Assembly: GCF_003704095.1 (NCBI RefSeq)
Contig: NW_020846779.1
Location: forward strand, 248,001-312,000
Source: Pocillopora damicornis
Lineage: Eukaryota
Length of the DNA: 64,000 nucleotides
Direction of reading: 5' to 3'
The translations under genes were made by a program, and so were the position numbers. The notes under the pieces are model-generated. The model ran no database searches. It was not told the origin of the DNA and saw nothing but the letters and a program-made list of their open reading frames with translations. This document shows, piece after piece, positions 56,301 through 63,205 of the stretch (the stretch's first letter is position 1; every line of letters starts with the position of its first letter).

Positions 56301-57101
56301 GGTGACCAAGACAGAATTTCACCTAAGAATATCAATACAATAATTTCTAACAGACAGGTGAAAGAAATATATCAATTGGGGATTATTAGTTGATCCAAAA
56401 CCAAAATCTCCAATCTAGCATCAAAAACATAACTAAGTAAATTAAAGAACAAGACAACTTTATATATTTTTTTAAATTTCATTTTGACTTAACTGAAGAA
56501 AGCTAAAACTGTGGCTTTTCTCACACGAAGTAGAAATAACGGGATGTAGCAGAGAGAAAGACGGAAATTGTAATAACTAGCAGATTTGCGATTGCTGTCG
56601 CTCCCTCACGATAGCTCTGATGACACGTCAATCAGTAGATGAGCTGAAAAAGACAGCTGATGATGTAAATTTCCGCAAAAAGAGATTATTAAAGCGAAAC
56701 CTGAAACCCACGCGACTCCCTCGGTGCAGGGTCAGTTTATCGTCTGACAGCACTGGAATACAGTTTACGTAAAGATCACAGTAGAAATTCCTCGTAAAAC
56801 CTTACGTGCAAGAGAGTGAGTAATCGACAATCCCTCGAGTCAGGAATTTTCGGATATATTGACTTACAACGATAGTGAAACTCAAGTATCATATTAAGCT
56901 TTCTTCAGGATTTTAATCAACAAAAACACTTAATCTTGGTGTCGCTGTCCGCTCAGTAGAAATGTCTGGTGACTGCGGACTCATCCTTAAGTAAATTTTA
57001 AAGAAATTAACTAGTACCTAGGCTAGTGCCCGTCTAGTACTTGTTTCATCGTATGTGTTTGGTATTCTATTAATATCCTTTATCTTGAAGCCGGCAGAAC
57101 G

Positions 57102-60100
57102 ATGTGTCGTCCAAGAGTTACTGCAGTCTTGCTCATGTTCATTCCTTGTTTGGTTTTCTCCGCGGAGATTCCGAATATCTTGCCGGGTGATGTTGCTCCT
57201 TCATTTGTTCTTCAAGCAAAGGAAGTAATTCATGGTACCGACGTACTTCTCAGATATGGAGGCAACGATTCCAACATCCAAGGACCCATTGTGTTCCTCG
57301 CGTATACCGACCGCTCAGGATTCTTAGATCGTCTTCTATCCGACCCAGATTGCTTCAAGACTCTGATGGAGAACTCCCCTGACAATACGAATTACGTGTT
57401 TCTTTTTTATGCGACTTCTTCATCTTCGGTCAAAGATGCTGCTGACCAGCTCGCTCGGAGATTTAAAGAAGCAATGTATAACTACTTTTTTCGGTAAGTC
57501 CTATGTCCCTCAGAATTGCTTTTCATTCTCGCGTTAATTAACTACATTGAGATTGTTGTGACCCGAATGAGTTCCGAAATACAAAAGCAGGCTTCTTCAA
57601 GATAGCGATACTAGAGTATTGTGACCCGAAAGAGTTCCGAAATACACGAGCAGGCCTCTTCACAACAGTGATACTAGCTAAGAAATTGCAACATCTTGGC
57701 CGACAAGGACCATTTTTACCTAAGGTGCAATATTTTGGAAAATTAACCCAAGTTTCGTGATCCGGAAGTCACGAATTTCACTTCCTTTCGCTAAACCCGA
57801 GCGGAAATGTTTTTCGCCATGAACACAATGCTGAACGACACTGATACAATCGGAAAGAGGCGCTGAAATTGAGGTTCAGGCAATCTTGATTTTCCGTTTG
57901 TTGACTTCTTTACCTCGGAGGGTCCTGACTTTTTACAACAGTGAGATCAATCCCTATATACATGCCGGCCAAGAGTGAGGTTTATTGGATTAGTAACTCT
58001 GGGATGCACTCATGTATTCATTGAATATAGTGTTGGCCACCCTCATGAAATGAAATAAACATCTGTCACTCTTCAATTCTATTTCATTAAGAGCACTACC
58101 ATCTTGGGTCCGCGGCAGCTGTGAACCTTGCTCCGGGTAAAGGATTCTTAGAACACTTTTGGCAAAAAGCCACCAGCGTAGATTTGCTGTCCAAAGAAAA
58201 CTGAAACCCTTGATATATTAGTTAGTAACACAACATAAACAAAAGGAACTTGAAATAGCACGTCCCAAAAATTATCAAAGTTTACTGCTTACATTACAAC
58301 TGTAAGAGCAGCTGAAACCATTTACTATAGTAATTAATAATATACACGAAAAAATTACGCGGGTCTGATTAGCTGAAAACGAGTGCATTTTTCATGTAAC
58401 ACAAGTGCAACTTACAAATAGCGCGCGCGCTATTTGTAAGTTGCACTTGTCGGAGTATTTTAAGGGGGATCATATGGTTTTCAGGAGGAACAGATGTAGT
58501 TTAGGTAACAGAATATAAATGGGGGAAGATAGAAAATTGACTGCCTATTAACTGCTATTAAAGAAAGGGGGGGGCATATATATTGCATAATCTTATGAGG
58601 CGATCAGGTAAATTTCATCGTGACATAACCAAAGGAAACGTGTGAATCGGAATTTACAGGCTTCATTGCTGTTGCAGATCCAGCAGGTCCCTCGAATTCT
58701 CCCGGGTAAGGAGATTCCCTACCTTGACCGCGAGAATGGGAACATTACTGGATTTCAGTAACAACTGGCTTTCGCGGGTACATATTGCGACATTTCCTGT
58801 ATTTACTCTCGGAAATTGGATCCCGCGGGTGCTATCTCAGTGGTATTGTTCCGGGCACGGGTGTGGCTTTGCCCAGATCGTCATTGAAAATGATAAAGGT
58901 ACTGCCATACATTTAGAGAATTAGTTTAGACACAAGAAATCAACTGTCAGAGACGGACAATCGGGCAGTTTTCCTGAATGTAAGGATTCCATCAACTTAA
59001 CTTTAGTCTCAGACGGAAACGGAAGTTTGTTTCTCCAGACTTCTGCACTTTAGATTCTTGCTTTAAAATAATAATACTAACACTCTTACTCTTAAAAGTC
59101 GTCTTTATCGACAAAACCAATCTCTAGGTCAGGCTTCATGCACACCTATAAGAAACATGCTTCGTTCTGCCGGAAACTGTCAGAAAGGGAAGACAGTGTA
59201 TCTTAAAACTAAGACCAAGAGCTTCTTTTTCTGTTCCCTCTTCGTAAATAATTATAAATACCATTAGCTTTACTTGATCTATTTTGAATTTTCACATTAC
59301 GCATTTTGTACTAAAGTTGTGTCGAATACTATTAGGAAAGGACATTATCCTGTTTTGAGTACGGTCTTATTACCTTTCTTTGTTTAAATATCAATGCTAA
59401 TAACTTGTACTTTTTGACTTTAATGAAGGTGAAATCCACATGGTGTCAAAGCGTTTAGATGCACGCTATGATTGGCTGCCGTCTCCAGACACGCTCGCAA
59501 AATACGGACATTTGCAAGTGGCGTTTGTTGGAGATGCCTGCAATGCCAGCTCGTTTGTGAATCCTGTAAATGGTAAACTTGCCCTCGTTTCAATGGAGGG
59601 CGTCCAATGTTCATACTTTACAAAGGTTAGTTGCTGTTTTTTCCATCGCCCAGAATGCTATTGTCTTTCGCGACATGTACTTGCAGTGCCCATTTAATCA
59701 GCGGGCAGCATAATAATTTGCATATCCTGAACCAGTCGGTTGTGATTGGTCAGCAGGTAAAGCTTTGGGAATACATGAGTCTCTTTGCAGATTTCAGCTG
59801 CTGTCAATCAAACGGTTGGATGCGTAAAGTAAATCCCAAGGTGACATAAAGTGAACAATAGCAATAATGAACAATAGCCACGCTCTTAACAAAGCGTTTA
59901 GCAAATTCGTTTGCAGCGAATAGTCCATTTTACAGTTGTGTGCTTGGTTGCCAAGCCTTTGAACAGGAGTGNNNNNNNNNNNNNNNNNNNNNNNNNNNNN
60001 NNNNNNNNNNNNNNNNNNNNNNNNNNNNNNNNNNNNNNNNNNNNNNNNNNNNNNNNNNNNNNNNNNNNNNNAGCGCCAGCGTCTCAATGAAAGTCCCGGA

Positions 60101-63100
60101 TATGTCGCTGAATTCTGGGCGATGTCTTCAATTTCTCGAAAGCCTTGCCTGATAAACGTTTGTCATGCTATGAGACTATTATCTAGAAAGATGTCACTCA
60201 TCTGAACGCGATCGTGGAACAAAAAAAAAAAGCGCCACCGAGAAATTTAAGCGTTCGACCTTCCAATTTTGCTTTCGGATGCTTTACAAACTGTGAGCAA
60301 AGCCTTACTGTCTTTCACTTTACCCCCCAGGTACAAAACTCTGAGAAAAATGGCGCTCTTGGTGTCCTGGTGTTTCCTGAACCGAACCAGGCTTTGCTAG
60401 ACATGAACTGTAACGGCTCAGAATGTAACACACAGCTCAACATCCCAGCATCCATGATTCCACATAGCATTGGGTTTAATTTGAGCAAGGGCAGTGGTAT
60501 TTATGTCCGTTTCCAGACAACGCCCTCAGACACATTTGTATTTGGAATTGACGGGGAGGGCAAAGTGGAGGAAACCGGTTGGTTTTTGTATCCGTCCACG
60601 CTCTTCATGGCCTATCAGGCCCAGTGGTGAGTTTACTTTAAACTCAGTTTCTGGAGTACTGTACTTTTGTTGTTTGAGTTGTTAGTCGATGGAAGCATTT
60701 ACAGAATACAGGGCCATTAAGGTCGGCACTTTGTCGGCATGCTGTGAAGAACGAGGCAGAACACAAAAGGATCAGTATTATGAATCGGTGAGGGGTAAAT
60801 AAGTGGCCCAACATTCTGTAGTTTTACTGGTCGCTGTATCTCTTTGTATCACTTCCACCAAGGACATCGGATCACGTAATACGTATATGTAGTGACGACA
60901 GAACGCTGTTTACATCTGTACATTTGAAGAGATTGGAGGGTTTATAGTTATCCTCATACATCAGTGTCTCCGCCTCAATCCCGGTTGGCCACGAGTTGAT
61001 TCTCGCTGGCATTGCTTTCGTTTTGTAATAGATACCTGCAACAATGTTTGTCTCATTCCCCCTAGCCTCAGAGCCATGTTAGAATTTCAATATATCGAAA
61101 ATGGCCTATGACAACACTGTTTTCCATTGGGACAAATAACATGTTGGTTGTTGTTGTTATTGTTTTTTTTTTAGTGCAGTTCCGTTTACGTTATCATTCT
61201 CTCCAACAGTAGTGGGAGCTGACCTCCCACCTCGGTCGAGAGCGGAGACATTGTATTGAAGTTCAGTTTTTAGTAGACCAGTGTTTTAGAGAAAAAACCC
61301 TAACATGTCATTACCTTTGTTAACACAGGTTTAATTATAAAACGCAGTTGTTGAAGAACTTGACAACGGGAGATGCGATGGTAATCAACGTGTTCAACCA
61401 CAGTGTGATGCAGGGAGAGAAAGGGGTCAGCGGTACTGTTCATCTGCCTTCTTTGAATGGTAAGATACAGGTATTACGATGCATTCGATTCCCTTCATTG
61501 TCCAGACAAAGGTGATACTTCCCTGAATGCCGGTAAGACGATGTGGAAAACCAATCTGCGCATAGGAAATAGCGAAATATCTCTGAAATTTCGTGAAAAA
61601 TTTGATTGTGTTTAAGGACGAGATTTTAGCACAAACACTGTGATCCTAAAATTTGTTGAAATAAGGTATTCACGTGTTTCTCTTTGTTCTGTGTTCTTAC
61701 TGTCTAGTAAGCTTTGAATTTGTCAGAAATTATTGTGGCAACAAATTGCCAATAACCATTATTTGCCACGCTAAGATCAAGCCCAAAACAACTTTTCTTC
61801 AGTAGTTTGGTTTGAGATCTAAATTGTTTGATATCTCTATTTAAGTTCATTGTGAATGCGGTTTGGTTTTGTGGCAATCACAGCTGACGTTTTCACTTCT
61901 CTTTCTAAGACCTCCAGAGGTACGAACACGTGGAATTGGACTTTGCTTTATCGTGCCCAGGCTCCAGAGACGAAACTTGCGCCAGATGGGATCACGTAAT
62001 ACAGCTGTACGTTTGCTGTAACTCTACAAGTGAGCTATGTGGCCTGGAACTAGGCAGATGGATAACACCCTTTAGACGGTAGGAGTAGAAACCAGAGACA
62101 AGCACATTTGTTAATTTTTTTGTTGATGTCATGATAGATGACGTCTCGAAGGATGCCAGGAAAATGCTTGTTATCAAGTCAATCAGCACACTTTTGAAAT
62201 AGCCGAGAAGATGGTAAAAACATTACAACTTTGATGATCATTGTCTGTTTGTTTCCACACAGACGTATTGGACGCTGGTTAACGCCAGTGAAGCCGCTGA
62301 TTCCTCTGCTACAATCCGCGGACTCCGGCTCAACCAACACTTGTAACTTTACAATGAAAACAGTTCCCTGGGCAATGGCGTGGGTTCCAACACTCAACAT
62401 CAGACTTGTTGGCAAAATACAAGGTATTACTCTGACTCAGCTCTACACAATGAAAAATTTCTTCTCATCAGTTTCACGGGGTGCTTATTAACTATAATAA
62501 TACCTTTTTGTATCCTCTTTAATGTTCAACTGAAGAAGATAACTGAACTCTGGTTTTTCTGTACGTTACTGCTTGACATTTTTACTCACACGTTCATTTT
62601 TATTCACAGTATTAAACAAGTATGAGACATTTCGCTCGAGAGAGAAGACTCTTGTTCCAGTAGAGGTTATACCACTCTTCAGGGGAGGAACATTTGACAA
62701 GAACTACAACACCAAATACAGACCCTTTACTTTTGCTCCTCCACAAGGAACTGACAAAGTAAAGCTTGTCGCAACCATAACAGGCCATGGCAGTGATAAT
62801 AACAACTGCGCCGAGTTCTGCGTCACATCGCATCATTTTGTTGTCAACAACAAACATAACTATACCCGTGTGTTCAAAAACGCCGGCACCGCCCTAGGGT
62901 GTGCTGACCGCGTGCCAGAGGGAGTGGTACCAAATGAGCATGGCACGTGGCTGTATGGGCGGGACGGTTGGTGTGATGGCCAGGAGGTAGTGCCCTGGGT
63001 CGTGGATATAACAAGTGCACTTACAACTCCTGAAAATCAGATCAAGTACTTTGGTTGGTTTAACAATACTGATCCCAATCCAACACGTGACCCTGGTGAT

Positions 63101-63205
63101 ATCATCATGTACTCTTATTTAGTGTACTACAAGTACTTAGCCCCGGAGCCGGACCTCCCTCGGCCAACCACACGAGTAGGAAGTGGACACGACATAAACA
63201 AATAG
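57102..63205 (+). CDS. Secreted/lysosomal peptide-N-glycosidase F-like protein (signal peptide + thioredoxin/AhpC-like + PA + PNGase F domains), 8 exons, 720 aa
   Basis: Exons: 57102-57493, 58678-58898, 59429-59625, 60331-60626, 61329-61459, 61910-62078, 62263-62423, 62610-63205 (2163 nt, all GT-AG, phases consistent). Motifs: signal peptide; GDVAPSFVL; PA domain GKLALV..CSYFTKVQNSEKNGALGVLVF..LNIPASMI; PNGase F motifs CARWDH, ELGRWITPF, ITGHG, CAEFC, GTWLYGRDGWCDG. AATAAA at ~63286. Confidence 0.92.
57556..57680. repeat. Two-copy tandem repeat, 63-bp period
   Basis: ttgtgacccgaa(t/a)gagttccgaaatac..agcaggc.tcttca..a.ag.gatactag at 57556 and 57619. Confidence 0.85.
58401..58450. repeat. Perfect 50-bp spacerless palindrome with (GC)5 centre
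   Basis: acaagtgcaacttacaaatagcgcgcgcgctatttgtaagttgcacttgt is its own reverse complement. Confidence 0.97.
59972..60071. other. Assembly gap (100 N) in intron 3 of the PNGase F-like gene
   Basis: Run of N. Confidence 1.
60205..60300 (-). mobile_element. Possible highly degenerate tRNA-derived SINE head
   Basis: Minus strand gctcacagtttgtaaagcatccg...ggaaggtcg..cttaaatttct..(T)n gttccacgatcg resembles decayed A/B boxes followed by a T-tract. No intact cloverleaf. Confidence 0.3.

What the first reader, a model, noticed from the sequence alone, without database searches (positions are those of the whole stretch)
57102..63205. Intron-containing animal gene for a bacterial-type PNGase F enzyme routed to the secretory pathway
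Seen in sequence: 8 spliced exons, a signal peptide, 10 N-x-S/T sequons, an AhpC/thioredoxin-like N-terminal segment without CxxC, a PA domain, and a C-terminal region with CARWDH, ELGRWITPF, CAEFC and GRDGWCDG. Established: Elizabethkingia PNGase F uses W59-D60, E206 (CAEWC) and R248 (RAGWC), and is unrelated to cytosolic transglutaminase-fold NGLY1. Inference: the D60, E206 and R248 equivalents are intact, so this is probably an active lumenal or extracellular N-glycan-releasing amidase, a second de-N-glycosylation system in a basal metazoan. From memory, unverified, a fish acid PNGase (Ngly2) has a similar architecture. A role in digestion, yolk turnover or editing symbiont glycans is speculative.
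Basis: partly seen in the sequence, partly recalled or inferred. Interest (0 to 1): 0.8.

Follow-up and report, generated by a model that had tools for sequence, protein, structure and literature searches.

The report
Coral orthologue of acid PNGase Ngly2
This is a real, expressed eight-exon coral gene for a secreted-pathway enzyme that cuts N-linked sugars off proteins, but it belongs to the Ngly2 acid PNGase family that was cloned, solved and reported in stony corals in 2025, so it is correct but ordinary.

Summary
Eight exons (57102-63205, + strand) give a 2163-nt, 720-codon reading frame. All seven GT..AG junctions appear in RNA contigs from four runs in four studies. The assembly gap (59972-60071) lies inside intron 3. 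Transcripts join exon 3 directly to exon 4, and zebrafish Ngly2 residues run on without a break across that junction.

Pfam finds PNGase F N and C domains in exons 6-8. Seven of the eight exons align, in order, to PDB 9LWG, zebrafish Ngly2; exon 1 needed a two-paralogue profile, and exon 5 matches nothing on its own. Ngly2 is the lysosomal acid PNGase published in J Biol Chem in 2025.

Every residue that paper tested or highlighted is kept: W420, D421, H422, W480, H546 and E555. So is the equivalent of PNGase F R248. The paper already lists orthologues in 14 stony corals.

Extras found here:
- A second, diverged paralogue with the same eight exons lies on another contig.
- NGLY1-type PAW domains occur elsewhere in the genome.
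- A dispersed repeat abuts the gap.

The scan had no earlier finding of this on other DNA.

The parts
57102..57493 (+). Exon 1. Start codon and signal-peptide-like N-terminus (about residues 1-20, 57102-57161). N-terminal part of the thioredoxin/peroxiredoxin-like domain, with no CxxC; the TDRS stretch sits about where peroxiredoxins have T-x-x-C (from memory, not tested here).
   Evidence: Translation. Hydropathy. A profile of this exon plus the paralogue's exon 1 hits 9LWG chain 76-168 (native 51-143, Tx-like domain) at E 2.6e-12. The donor joint is seen in RNA contigs.
58678..58898 (+). Exon 2. End of the first Tx-like segment and start of the PA domain (GNWIPRVL, C-x4-C).
   Evidence: Residues 30-70 align to 9LWG chain 176-216, E 1.2e-10. 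Joints.
59429..59625 (+). Exon 3. First half of the PA domain, ending ...CSYFTK.
   Evidence: Aligns to 9LWG chain 224-277, E 0.025. Joints.
59626..60330 (+). Intron 3. It contains the assembly gap (59972-60071). The end of a dispersed repeat (about 59918-59971) abuts the gap on its left side.
   Evidence: RNA contigs skip 59626-60330 with GT..AG ends and no letters between. The 9LWG chain is continuous at 277|278. The repeat has at least 629 first-look candidates in the genome.
60331..60626 (+). Exon 4. Second half of the PA domain, the second Tx-like segment and the start of the linker.
   Evidence: Residues 1-98 align to 9LWG chain 278-377, E 1.7e-26. Weak Pfam PA match, E 0.2.
61329..61459 (+). 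Exon 5. Linker and start of the PNGase N-terminal jelly roll, placed by position only.
   Evidence: No PDB or Pfam hit on its own. It fills the space between chain 377 and 422. It is 52% identical to the paralogue's exon 5. Joints.
61910..62078 (+). Exon 6. PNGase F N domain with the W-D-H motif (61987-61995). The Asp at 61990-61992 corresponds to PNGase F D60 and Ngly2 D421. The His corresponds to Ngly2 H422, replacing PNGase F R61.
   Evidence: Pfam PF09112, E 8.8e-9. 9LWG chain 422-474 at E 2e-21, and 1PNF residues 51-85.
62263..62423 (+). Exon 7. End of the PNGase F N domain. The Trp at 62369-62371 corresponds to Ngly2 W480.
   Evidence: Pfam PF09112, E 6.6e-5. 9LWG chain 478-517, E 4.1e-10.
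62610..63205 (+). Exon 8. PNGase F C domain and stop codon. His at 62786-62788 corresponds to Ngly2 H546 (PNGase F W191). Glu at 62813-62815 corresponds to E206/E555. Arg at 62960-62962 corresponds to PNGase F R248. A C-terminal tail of about 25 residues extends beyond the last residue of the solved zebrafish chain.
   Evidence: Pfam PF09113, E 9.9e-35, full profile 1-140. 9LWG chain 522-687 at E 4.6e-66, and 1PNF 175-286 at E 2.7e-7.

Best explanation
This gene is a stony-coral orthologue of Ngly2, the animal acid peptide:N-glycanase.

Shown here:
- It is an expressed eight-exon gene.
- The product has a signal-peptide-like N-terminus and 10 sequons.
- It carries a thioredoxin-like domain without CxxC, a PA domain and a C-terminal PNGase F-type two-jelly-roll domain.
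- All residues known to matter in zebrafish Ngly2 and PNGase F are intact.

Inferred by orthology:
- The protein enters the ER, becomes N-glycosylated and is delivered to an acidic lysosome-like compartment.
[quoted passage not shown] - Catalysis uses the Asp of W-D-H and the Glu of CAEFC. The products are a free glycan and an Asp residue.
- The two histidines that replace PNGase F R61 and W191 predict an acidic pH optimum.
For: Gene model and expression:
- Seven GT..AG joints appear in RNA contigs of four runs from four studies, including polyA libraries.

Domains:
- PF09112 lies in exons 6 and 7, and PF09113 (full length, E 9.9e-35) in exon 8.

Collinear mapping onto zebrafish Ngly2 (PDB 9LWG), exon by exon:
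- Exon 1, as a two-paralogue profile, maps to chain 76-168.
- Exon 2 maps to 176-216, exon 3 to 224-277 and exon 4 to 278-377.
- Exon 6 maps to 422-474, exon 7 to 478-517 and exon 8 to 522-687.

Residues:
- Equivalents of W420, D421, H422, W480, H546 and E555 are conserved, as is PNGase F R248.
- In zebrafish, D421A and E555A abolish activity and W480A leaves about 3.6%.

Literature (PMC12753239):
- Acid optimum (active at pH 3.5, hardly at pH 6.0), Lamp1 colocalisation, homodimer, and a Tx-like domain lacking CxxC.
- Orthologues are listed in Anthozoa, including 14 stony corals.

This protein:
- No CxxC and 10 sequons.
- Hydrophobic N-terminal core.
Against: - No activity, pH profile or localisation exists for any cnidarian protein. 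Acid optimum and lysosomal targeting are inferred from about 60% identity in the C domain and two conserved histidines.
- Exon 1 alone does not match 9LWG, and exon 5 matches nothing on its own.
- The AlphaFold model of exon 1 was too poor to test the thioredoxin-like fold (pLDDT 46).
- The Pfam PA match is below its cut-off.
- The gene's RNA is found in whole-colony coral libraries, whereas zebrafish ngly2 is almost ovary-restricted. The biological role may therefore differ.
- No joined full-length protein was analysed.
Confidence: 0.82

Rival explanations
1. The same enzyme family, but the product is secreted. It would go to the gastrovascular cavity, mucus or egg coat and act extracellularly, possibly at near-neutral pH, in digestion or in editing microbial or symbiont glycans. 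It would not be a lysosomal acid hydrolase.
For: - It has a signal peptide and no transmembrane segment or obvious retention signal in the exon translations.
- Transcripts are present in adult colony RNA from several studies.
- A C-terminal tail of about 25 residues extends beyond the last residue of the solved zebrafish chain.
- Some bacterial relatives work at pH 6-9.
Against: - The two histidines proposed to give Ngly2 its acid optimum are conserved, rather than the R61 and W191 of neutral PNGase F.
- The only characterised animal member is lysosomal and barely active at pH 6.0.
Confidence: 0.12
2. A catalytically dead or decaying copy. It would be either a glycan-binding protein that kept the fold but lost activity, or a pseudogene, with the paralogue on contig C1762 being the working enzyme.
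For: - A second full paralogue exists.
- No activity data exist.
Against: - The 720-codon frame is open, with canonical splice sites.
- It is spliced in polyA RNA.
- All catalytic and substrate-binding residues are intact.
- This copy scores higher against zebrafish Ngly2 than the paralogue does: 226 versus 190 bits for exon 8.
Confidence: 0.03
3. Bacterial contamination, or a very recent horizontal transfer into this coral, rather than an old animal gene.
For: - PNGase F was first known from bacteria.
- PF09113 also rings in Deinococcus radiodurans among the control genomes.
Against: - It has seven spliceosomal introns that are removed in polyA RNA.
- Intron GC (0.33-0.43) brackets the window's overall GC of 0.38.
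- A paralogue 34-64% identical per exon has the same eight exons in the same order, with junctions at matching points where compared.
- Orthologues occur from sponges to fish.
- Peptide-pattern scans of 185,579 prokaryotic species found no close relative, although that scan has limited sensitivity.
Confidence: 0.02

Closest known systems
Zebrafish Ngly2, the acid PNGase (si:dkey-256h2.1, PDB 9LWG; Honda et al., J Biol Chem 2025, PMC12753239)
   Same: - The domain order is the same: signal sequence, Tx-like domain without CxxC, PA domain, linker, then PNGase F N and C domains.
- Seven of the eight exons align collinearly; exon 5 fits by position only.
- Exon 8 is roughly 60% identical over 165 residues (E 4.6e-66).
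- W420, D421, H422, W480, H546 and E555 are all conserved.
- It carries many N-glycosylation sequons.
   Different: - The coral protein is longer (720 versus about 662 residues), with a C-terminal tail of about 25 residues and a six-residue insert in exon 7.
- The N-terminal Tx-like part is so diverged that a single-sequence search misses it.
- RNA holding the gene is found in whole-colony libraries rather than only ovary.
- The coral has two diverged paralogues.
- No biochemical data exist for the coral enzyme.
Elizabethkingia meningoseptica PNGase F (PDB 1PNF, 1PNG, 1PGS, 3PMS)
   Same: - Both have the two-jelly-roll PNGase domain (PF09112 + PF09113).
- D60, E206 and R248 equivalents, W59, and the flanking cysteines in the C..WD, CAE.C and GWC motifs all align.
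   Different: - Similarity is low (E 2.7e-7 for the C domain).
- R61 and W191 are replaced by His.
- The coral protein adds the N-terminal Tx-like and PA domains.
- It is a eukaryotic intron-containing gene.
- PNGase F works at pH 7.5-9, while an acid optimum is expected here.
Cytosolic NGLY1/Png1 (transglutaminase fold with PUB and PAW domains)
   Same: The net reaction is the same: release of N-glycans with Asn-to-Asp conversion.
   Different: - The fold and the compartment are unrelated.
- No exon of this gene gave a transglutaminase-core, PUB or PAW match at E up to 1.
- PAW-domain exons lie on a different contig, C2278.
Plant and fungal PNGase A (PF12222) and bacterial PNGase H+
   Same: They are acid-active PNGases of the secretory or vacuolar route.
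   Different: - They belong to a different family.
- No PF12222 match appeared in any exon.
- The paper reports only about 20% identity between Ngly2 and PNGase H+.

Membership tests
Ngly2 (animal acid PNGase) | C-terminal PNGase F-type domain made of PF09112 plus PF09113 | tested here: met
   PF09112 lies in exon 6 (35.8 bits) and exon 7 (23.2 bits). PF09113 lies in exon 8 (119.8 bits, profile 1-140 of 140). All are above the curated cut-offs.
Ngly2 (animal acid PNGase) | Catalytic Asp and Glu (zebrafish D421, E555; PNGase F D60, E206) | tested here: met
   The Asp in CARWDH aligns to chain 446 of 9LWG (native 421) and to D60 of 1PNF. The Glu in CAEFC aligns to chain 580 (native 555) and to E206.
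Ngly2 (animal acid PNGase) | Family-specific histidines (H422, H546) in place of PNGase F R61 and W191, plus W420 and W480 | tested here: met
   W-D-H is in exon 6, the His of TGHGS is in exon 8, and the Trp of TVPW is in exon 7. Each aligns to the zebrafish residue. Their roles are described.
Ngly2 (animal acid PNGase) | N-terminal thioredoxin-like domain lacking CxxC | tested here: met
   The exon 1 profile hits 9LWG chain 76-168, inside the Tx-like domain, at E 2.6e-12. No CxxC occurs in any exon. The fold itself was not confirmed, because the AF2 model had pLDDT 46.
Ngly2 (animal acid PNGase) | PA domain inserted between the two Tx-like segments | tested here: met
   Exons 2-4 align to 9LWG chain 176-377 (native 151-352), which covers the PA domain at native 186-318. 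The Pfam PA match alone is below its cut-off, E 0.2.
Ngly2 (animal acid PNGase) | Entry into the secretory pathway (signal peptide, N-glycosylation) | tested here: inconclusive
   The N-terminus has Arg residues, a hydrophobic core and small residues at -3 and -1, and there are 10 sequons. Only a simple hydropathy scan was run, not a trained predictor.
Ngly2 (animal acid PNGase) | PNGase activity with an acidic pH optimum, lysosomal location, homodimer | not testable with these tools
   These are known only for the zebrafish and medaka enzymes.
Bacterial PNGase F sensu stricto | Chitobiose-binding R61 and W191, and a stand-alone two-domain enzyme | tested here: not met
   Both positions are His here. 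The protein also carries additional Tx-like and PA domains.
NGLY1/Png1 cytosolic PNGase | Transglutaminase-like core with a Cys-His-Asp triad, and a PAW domain in animals | tested here: not met
   No such Pfam match appeared in any exon at E up to 1. PAW exons lie on another contig.

The most novel reading that the evidence does not exclude
The two deeply diverged coral Ngly2 paralogues have split roles. One would work in yolk or lysosomal turnover, as in fish eggs. The other would work in the acidic phagosome or symbiosome, stripping N-glycans from ingested microbes or from the algal symbiont's surface, and so would take part in symbiont recognition or digestion. Nothing here tests this. It rests only on three facts: the gene's RNA is found in adult colony libraries, a second paralogue exists, and the family is acid-active.
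Probability: 0.08. Interest if true: 0.6.

Novelty: already known. Interest (0 to 1): 0.2.

Why it matters
It confirms that a stony coral carries and transcribes an intact gene of the recently defined Ngly2 acid PNGase family, alongside NGLY1-type PAW-domain genes. It also confirms that the gene model is sound despite the assembly gap.

The family's discovery, structure, catalytic residues and wide distribution in aquatic animals, stony corals included, were published in 2025. The general point is therefore not new.

Three modest questions remain open. What is the enzyme's role outside fish eggs? Why does this coral keep two old paralogues? Does the enzyme act in acidic digestive or symbiont-holding compartments?

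Tried and rejected
- Single-sequence PDB search with exon 1 gave only chance hits, E about 1. A two-paralogue profile solved this.
- Exon 5 alone gave no PDB or Pfam hit. It is placed by position only.
- AlphaFold2 of exon 1 with a two-row alignment gave pLDDT 45.9. That is too poor for a fold search, so none was run and the thioredoxin-like fold rests on sequence alignment to the solved zebrafish domain.
- Two peptide-pattern scans of prokaryotic genomes, with exon 8 and then with the two-paralogue alignment, found no relatives. These scans need exact 7-8-residue words, so this only says there is no close bacterial relative. It does not settle the origin of the family.
- The large protein searches (search for homologous proteins, the search of protein representatives) were not used. 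The family scans and the PDB had already identified the protein, and the word search cannot reach full-length relatives from single exons.
So there was no full-length structure prediction, no whole-protein phylogeny and no dimer prediction.
- A hidden exon in the assembly gap was considered and rejected.
- Contamination or recent horizontal transfer was considered and rejected.
Full report
**Observation**

Reading the region and translating each exon by reference gives eight exons on the + strand:
- 57102-57493
- 58678-58898
- 59429-59625
- 60331-60626
- 61329-61459
- 61910-62078
- 62263-62423
- 62610-63205

All introns have GT..AG ends. The phases are consistent (2, 1, 0, 2, 1, 2, 1). The coding length is 2163 nt, or 720 codons plus a stop. 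Exon GC (0.44-0.50) is above intron GC (0.33-0.43) and the window mean (0.38), as expected for a native gene.

- CARWDH at 61978-61995
- ELGRWITPF at 62047-62073
- CAEFC at 62807-62821
- GRDGWCDG at 62957-62980

There are exactly 10 N-x-S/T sequons and no CxxC anywhere. No sequon spans a junction; I read the split codons one at a time.

The N-terminus has two arginines, a hydrophobic core over residues 6-19 and V-F-S|A. That is the usual shape of a signal peptide. No trained predictor was available.

**The assembly gap, tested first**

The N run at 59972-60071 lies inside intron 3 (59626-60330). Two independent tests show nothing coding is lost.
- RNA-derived contigs from four runs in four studies join 59625 directly to 60331, with GT..AG ends and no letters in between (tables 5 and 5c).
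- Exon 3 aligns to the zebrafish Ngly2 chain up to residue 277 (...CSFFTK). Exon 4 begins at residue 278.

No attempt was made to fill the gap. The gap's left flank (about 59918-59971) is the end of a dispersed repeat with at least 629 first-look candidates in this genome. That explains both the assembly break and the very high contig depth there (table 2).

**Expression and gene model**

Runs that hold exon 8 include polyA metatranscriptomes labelled marine metagenome and RNA-seq labelled coral metagenome. When laid on 57080-63079, contigs of runs X1, X13 and X5 show all seven predicted joints, and X6 shows six. In X1 a single 2956-nt contig crosses all seven joints, and its listed pieces show no mismatch. 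It extends about 290 nt upstream of 57080 and about 600 nt beyond 63079.

The refutation condition 'no transcripts span the predicted junctions' is therefore not met. These are contigs, not raw reads, so they show that the spliced form exists. They do not show its level, strand or ends.

**What it is**

Pfam finds Peptide-N-glycosidase F N-terminal domain (PF09112) in exons 6 and 7. It finds the complete C-terminal domain (PF09113, E 9.9e-35) in exon 8.

Against solved structures, exon 8 hits PDB 9LWG chain A (Si:dkey-256h2.1, 687 residues) at E 4.6e-66. It hits Elizabethkingia PNGase F at about 3e-7.

9LWG is zebrafish Ngly2. This is the long-sought acid PNGase of fish eggs, described by Honda et al. 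in J Biol Chem 2025 (PMC12753239). The paper reports the following:
- a thioredoxin-like domain lacking CxxC (native residues 58-185 and 319-343)
- a PA domain (186-318), a linker helix and a PNGase domain (369-662)
- activity at pH 3.5 but hardly at pH 6.0, and colocalisation with Lamp1
- dead D421A and E555A mutants, and a W480A mutant with about 3.6% activity

**Exon-by-exon mapping**

Seven of the eight exons map collinearly on the 9LWG chain, whose index is the native number plus 25.

| Exon | 9LWG chain residues | E-value |
|---|---|---|
| 1 (profile of the two coral paralogues) | 76-168 | 2.6e-12 |
| 2 | 176-216 | 1.2e-10 |
| 3 | 224-277 | 0.025 |
| 4 | 278-377 | 1.7e-26 |
| 5 | no hit alone; fills 378-421 by position | - |
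| 6 | 422-474 | 2e-21 |
| 7 | 478-517 | 4.1e-10 |
| 8 | 522-687 | 4.6e-66 |

That includes the 'AhpC/thioredoxin-like segment without CxxC' and the PA domain, for which the Pfam match alone is sub-threshold (E 0.2).

**Catalytic and binding residues**

Counting along the printed alignments gives these correspondences.

| Coral residue | Window position | Zebrafish Ngly2 | PNGase F |
|---|---|---|---|
| Trp of W-D-H | 61987-61989 | W420 | W59 |
| Asp of W-D-H | 61990-61992 | D421 | D60 |
| His of W-D-H | 61993-61995 | H422 | R61 |
| Trp of TVPW | 62369-62371 | W480 | - |
| His of TGHGS | 62786-62788 | H546 | W191 |
| Glu of CAEFC | 62813-62815 | E555 | E206 |
| Arg of GRDGWC | 62960-62962 | - | R248 |

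Every residue that was mutated or highlighted in the zebrafish enzyme is conserved.

The His replacements that another first-stage note (s1-783814) read as hints of broader specificity are the signature of the Ngly2 family. The authors propose that they underlie the acid pH optimum. They are not a peculiarity of this coral.

**Mechanism**

Shown here: an expressed gene for a full-length Ngly2-type protein with an intact active site and an N-terminal signal-like sequence.

Inferred from the zebrafish work:
- import into the ER and N-glycosylation
- delivery to an acidic lysosome-like compartment
- homodimerisation
- hydrolysis of the Asn-GlcNAc amide on flexible glycopeptides held in the PA/PNGase cleft, giving free N-glycans and Asp

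I put about 0.8 on this. A secreted, extracellular version of the same enzyme is the main rival (about 0.12). A dead copy or a contaminant is unlikely.

**Context in the genome**

The window is G000:C3414:248001-312000, in a 234-Mb assembly of 4393 contigs. Those figures and the coral run labels fit a pocilloporid stony coral from memory only; I did not verify the species.

A six-frame search of the whole genome with PF09113 finds a second locus, C1762:80107-80532. The region fetched around it holds all eight exons in the same order. They are 34-64% identical to the window copy exon by exon, and the junctions fall at matching points where I compared them (...YFKR|gt...YFTK|gt...AKW|gt...PYRR|gt). 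The W-D-H, SGHGSD, CAEFC and GRDGWC motifs are intact.

The paralogue's exon 8 scores 190 bits against 9LWG, against 226 bits for the window copy. So the coral keeps two old Ngly2 paralogues, and the window copy is the one closer to the fish enzyme.

PAW domains, the animal NGLY1-type C-terminal domain, are found as two tandem sets of exons on C2278. This fits the idea that Ngly2 is a second system beside the cytosolic one. I did not examine the transglutaminase core of those loci.

**Novelty**

The paper reports orthologues in sponges, cnidarians (Anthozoa: 14 stony corals, 3 soft corals, 4 sea anemones; Scyphozoa; Hydrozoa), echinoderms, hemichordates, cephalochordates, ascidians, tardigrades, brachiopods, annelids and molluscs, and in fish but not tetrapods. 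A library search for 'Ngly2' found no other relevant paper and none on cnidarians.

But the kind of gene, its architecture, its mechanism and its presence in stony corals are already in the literature.

Origin (ancestral versus transfer) was not resolved here. Two peptide-pattern scans of prokaryotic genomes found no close relative, but these scans are insensitive. The introns, the ancient paralogue with the same exon order, and the sponge-to-fish distribution argue for an old animal gene.

**Verdict**

Observation confirmed. Interpretation supported. Novelty low. Interest about 0.2.

The most novel reading left open is subfunctionalisation of the two paralogues, with a role in acidic digestive or symbiont-holding compartments. 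It is untested and I give it a probability of about 0.08.

Noticed in passing
G000:C1762:73506-80556 (locus L003:2507-9557): A second Ngly2-type gene in the same genome. It has the same eight exons in the same order, 34-64% identical per exon. The W-D-H, SGHGSD, CAEFC and GRDGWC motifs are intact, and its PA domain has a longer insert in exon 3. This looks like an old duplication.
   Followed up: partly
window 59918-59971 (left flank of the N gap at 59972-60071): The end of a short dispersed repeat runs into the assembly gap. The genome search gave at least 629 first-look candidates, with many 98-100% identical 53-54-nt copies. RNA contig depth over it is very high. It probably caused the assembly break.
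   Followed up: partly
window 58401-58450 (intron 1): A perfect 25+25-nt palindrome with no spacer, centred on GCGCGCGC. One RNA run has some contig depth in this bin. It may be a transposon end or a hairpin. Unexplained.
   Followed up: no
window 57550-57675 (intron 1): Two tandem copies of a 63-nt unit, 84% identical.
   Followed up: no
G000:C2278:381629-382662 and 391850-393931: Two neighbouring sets of exons match the PAW domain (PF04721) of NGLY1-type cytosolic PNGases. This suggests a tandem pair of PAW-domain genes. The rest of those genes was not examined.
   Followed up: no
window 57120-63008: About 20 single-base differences, mostly transitions, separate the contigs of runs X5, X6 and X13 from the window, while X1 is identical to it over the exons. 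This looks like allelic or population variation among coral samples.
   Followed up: no
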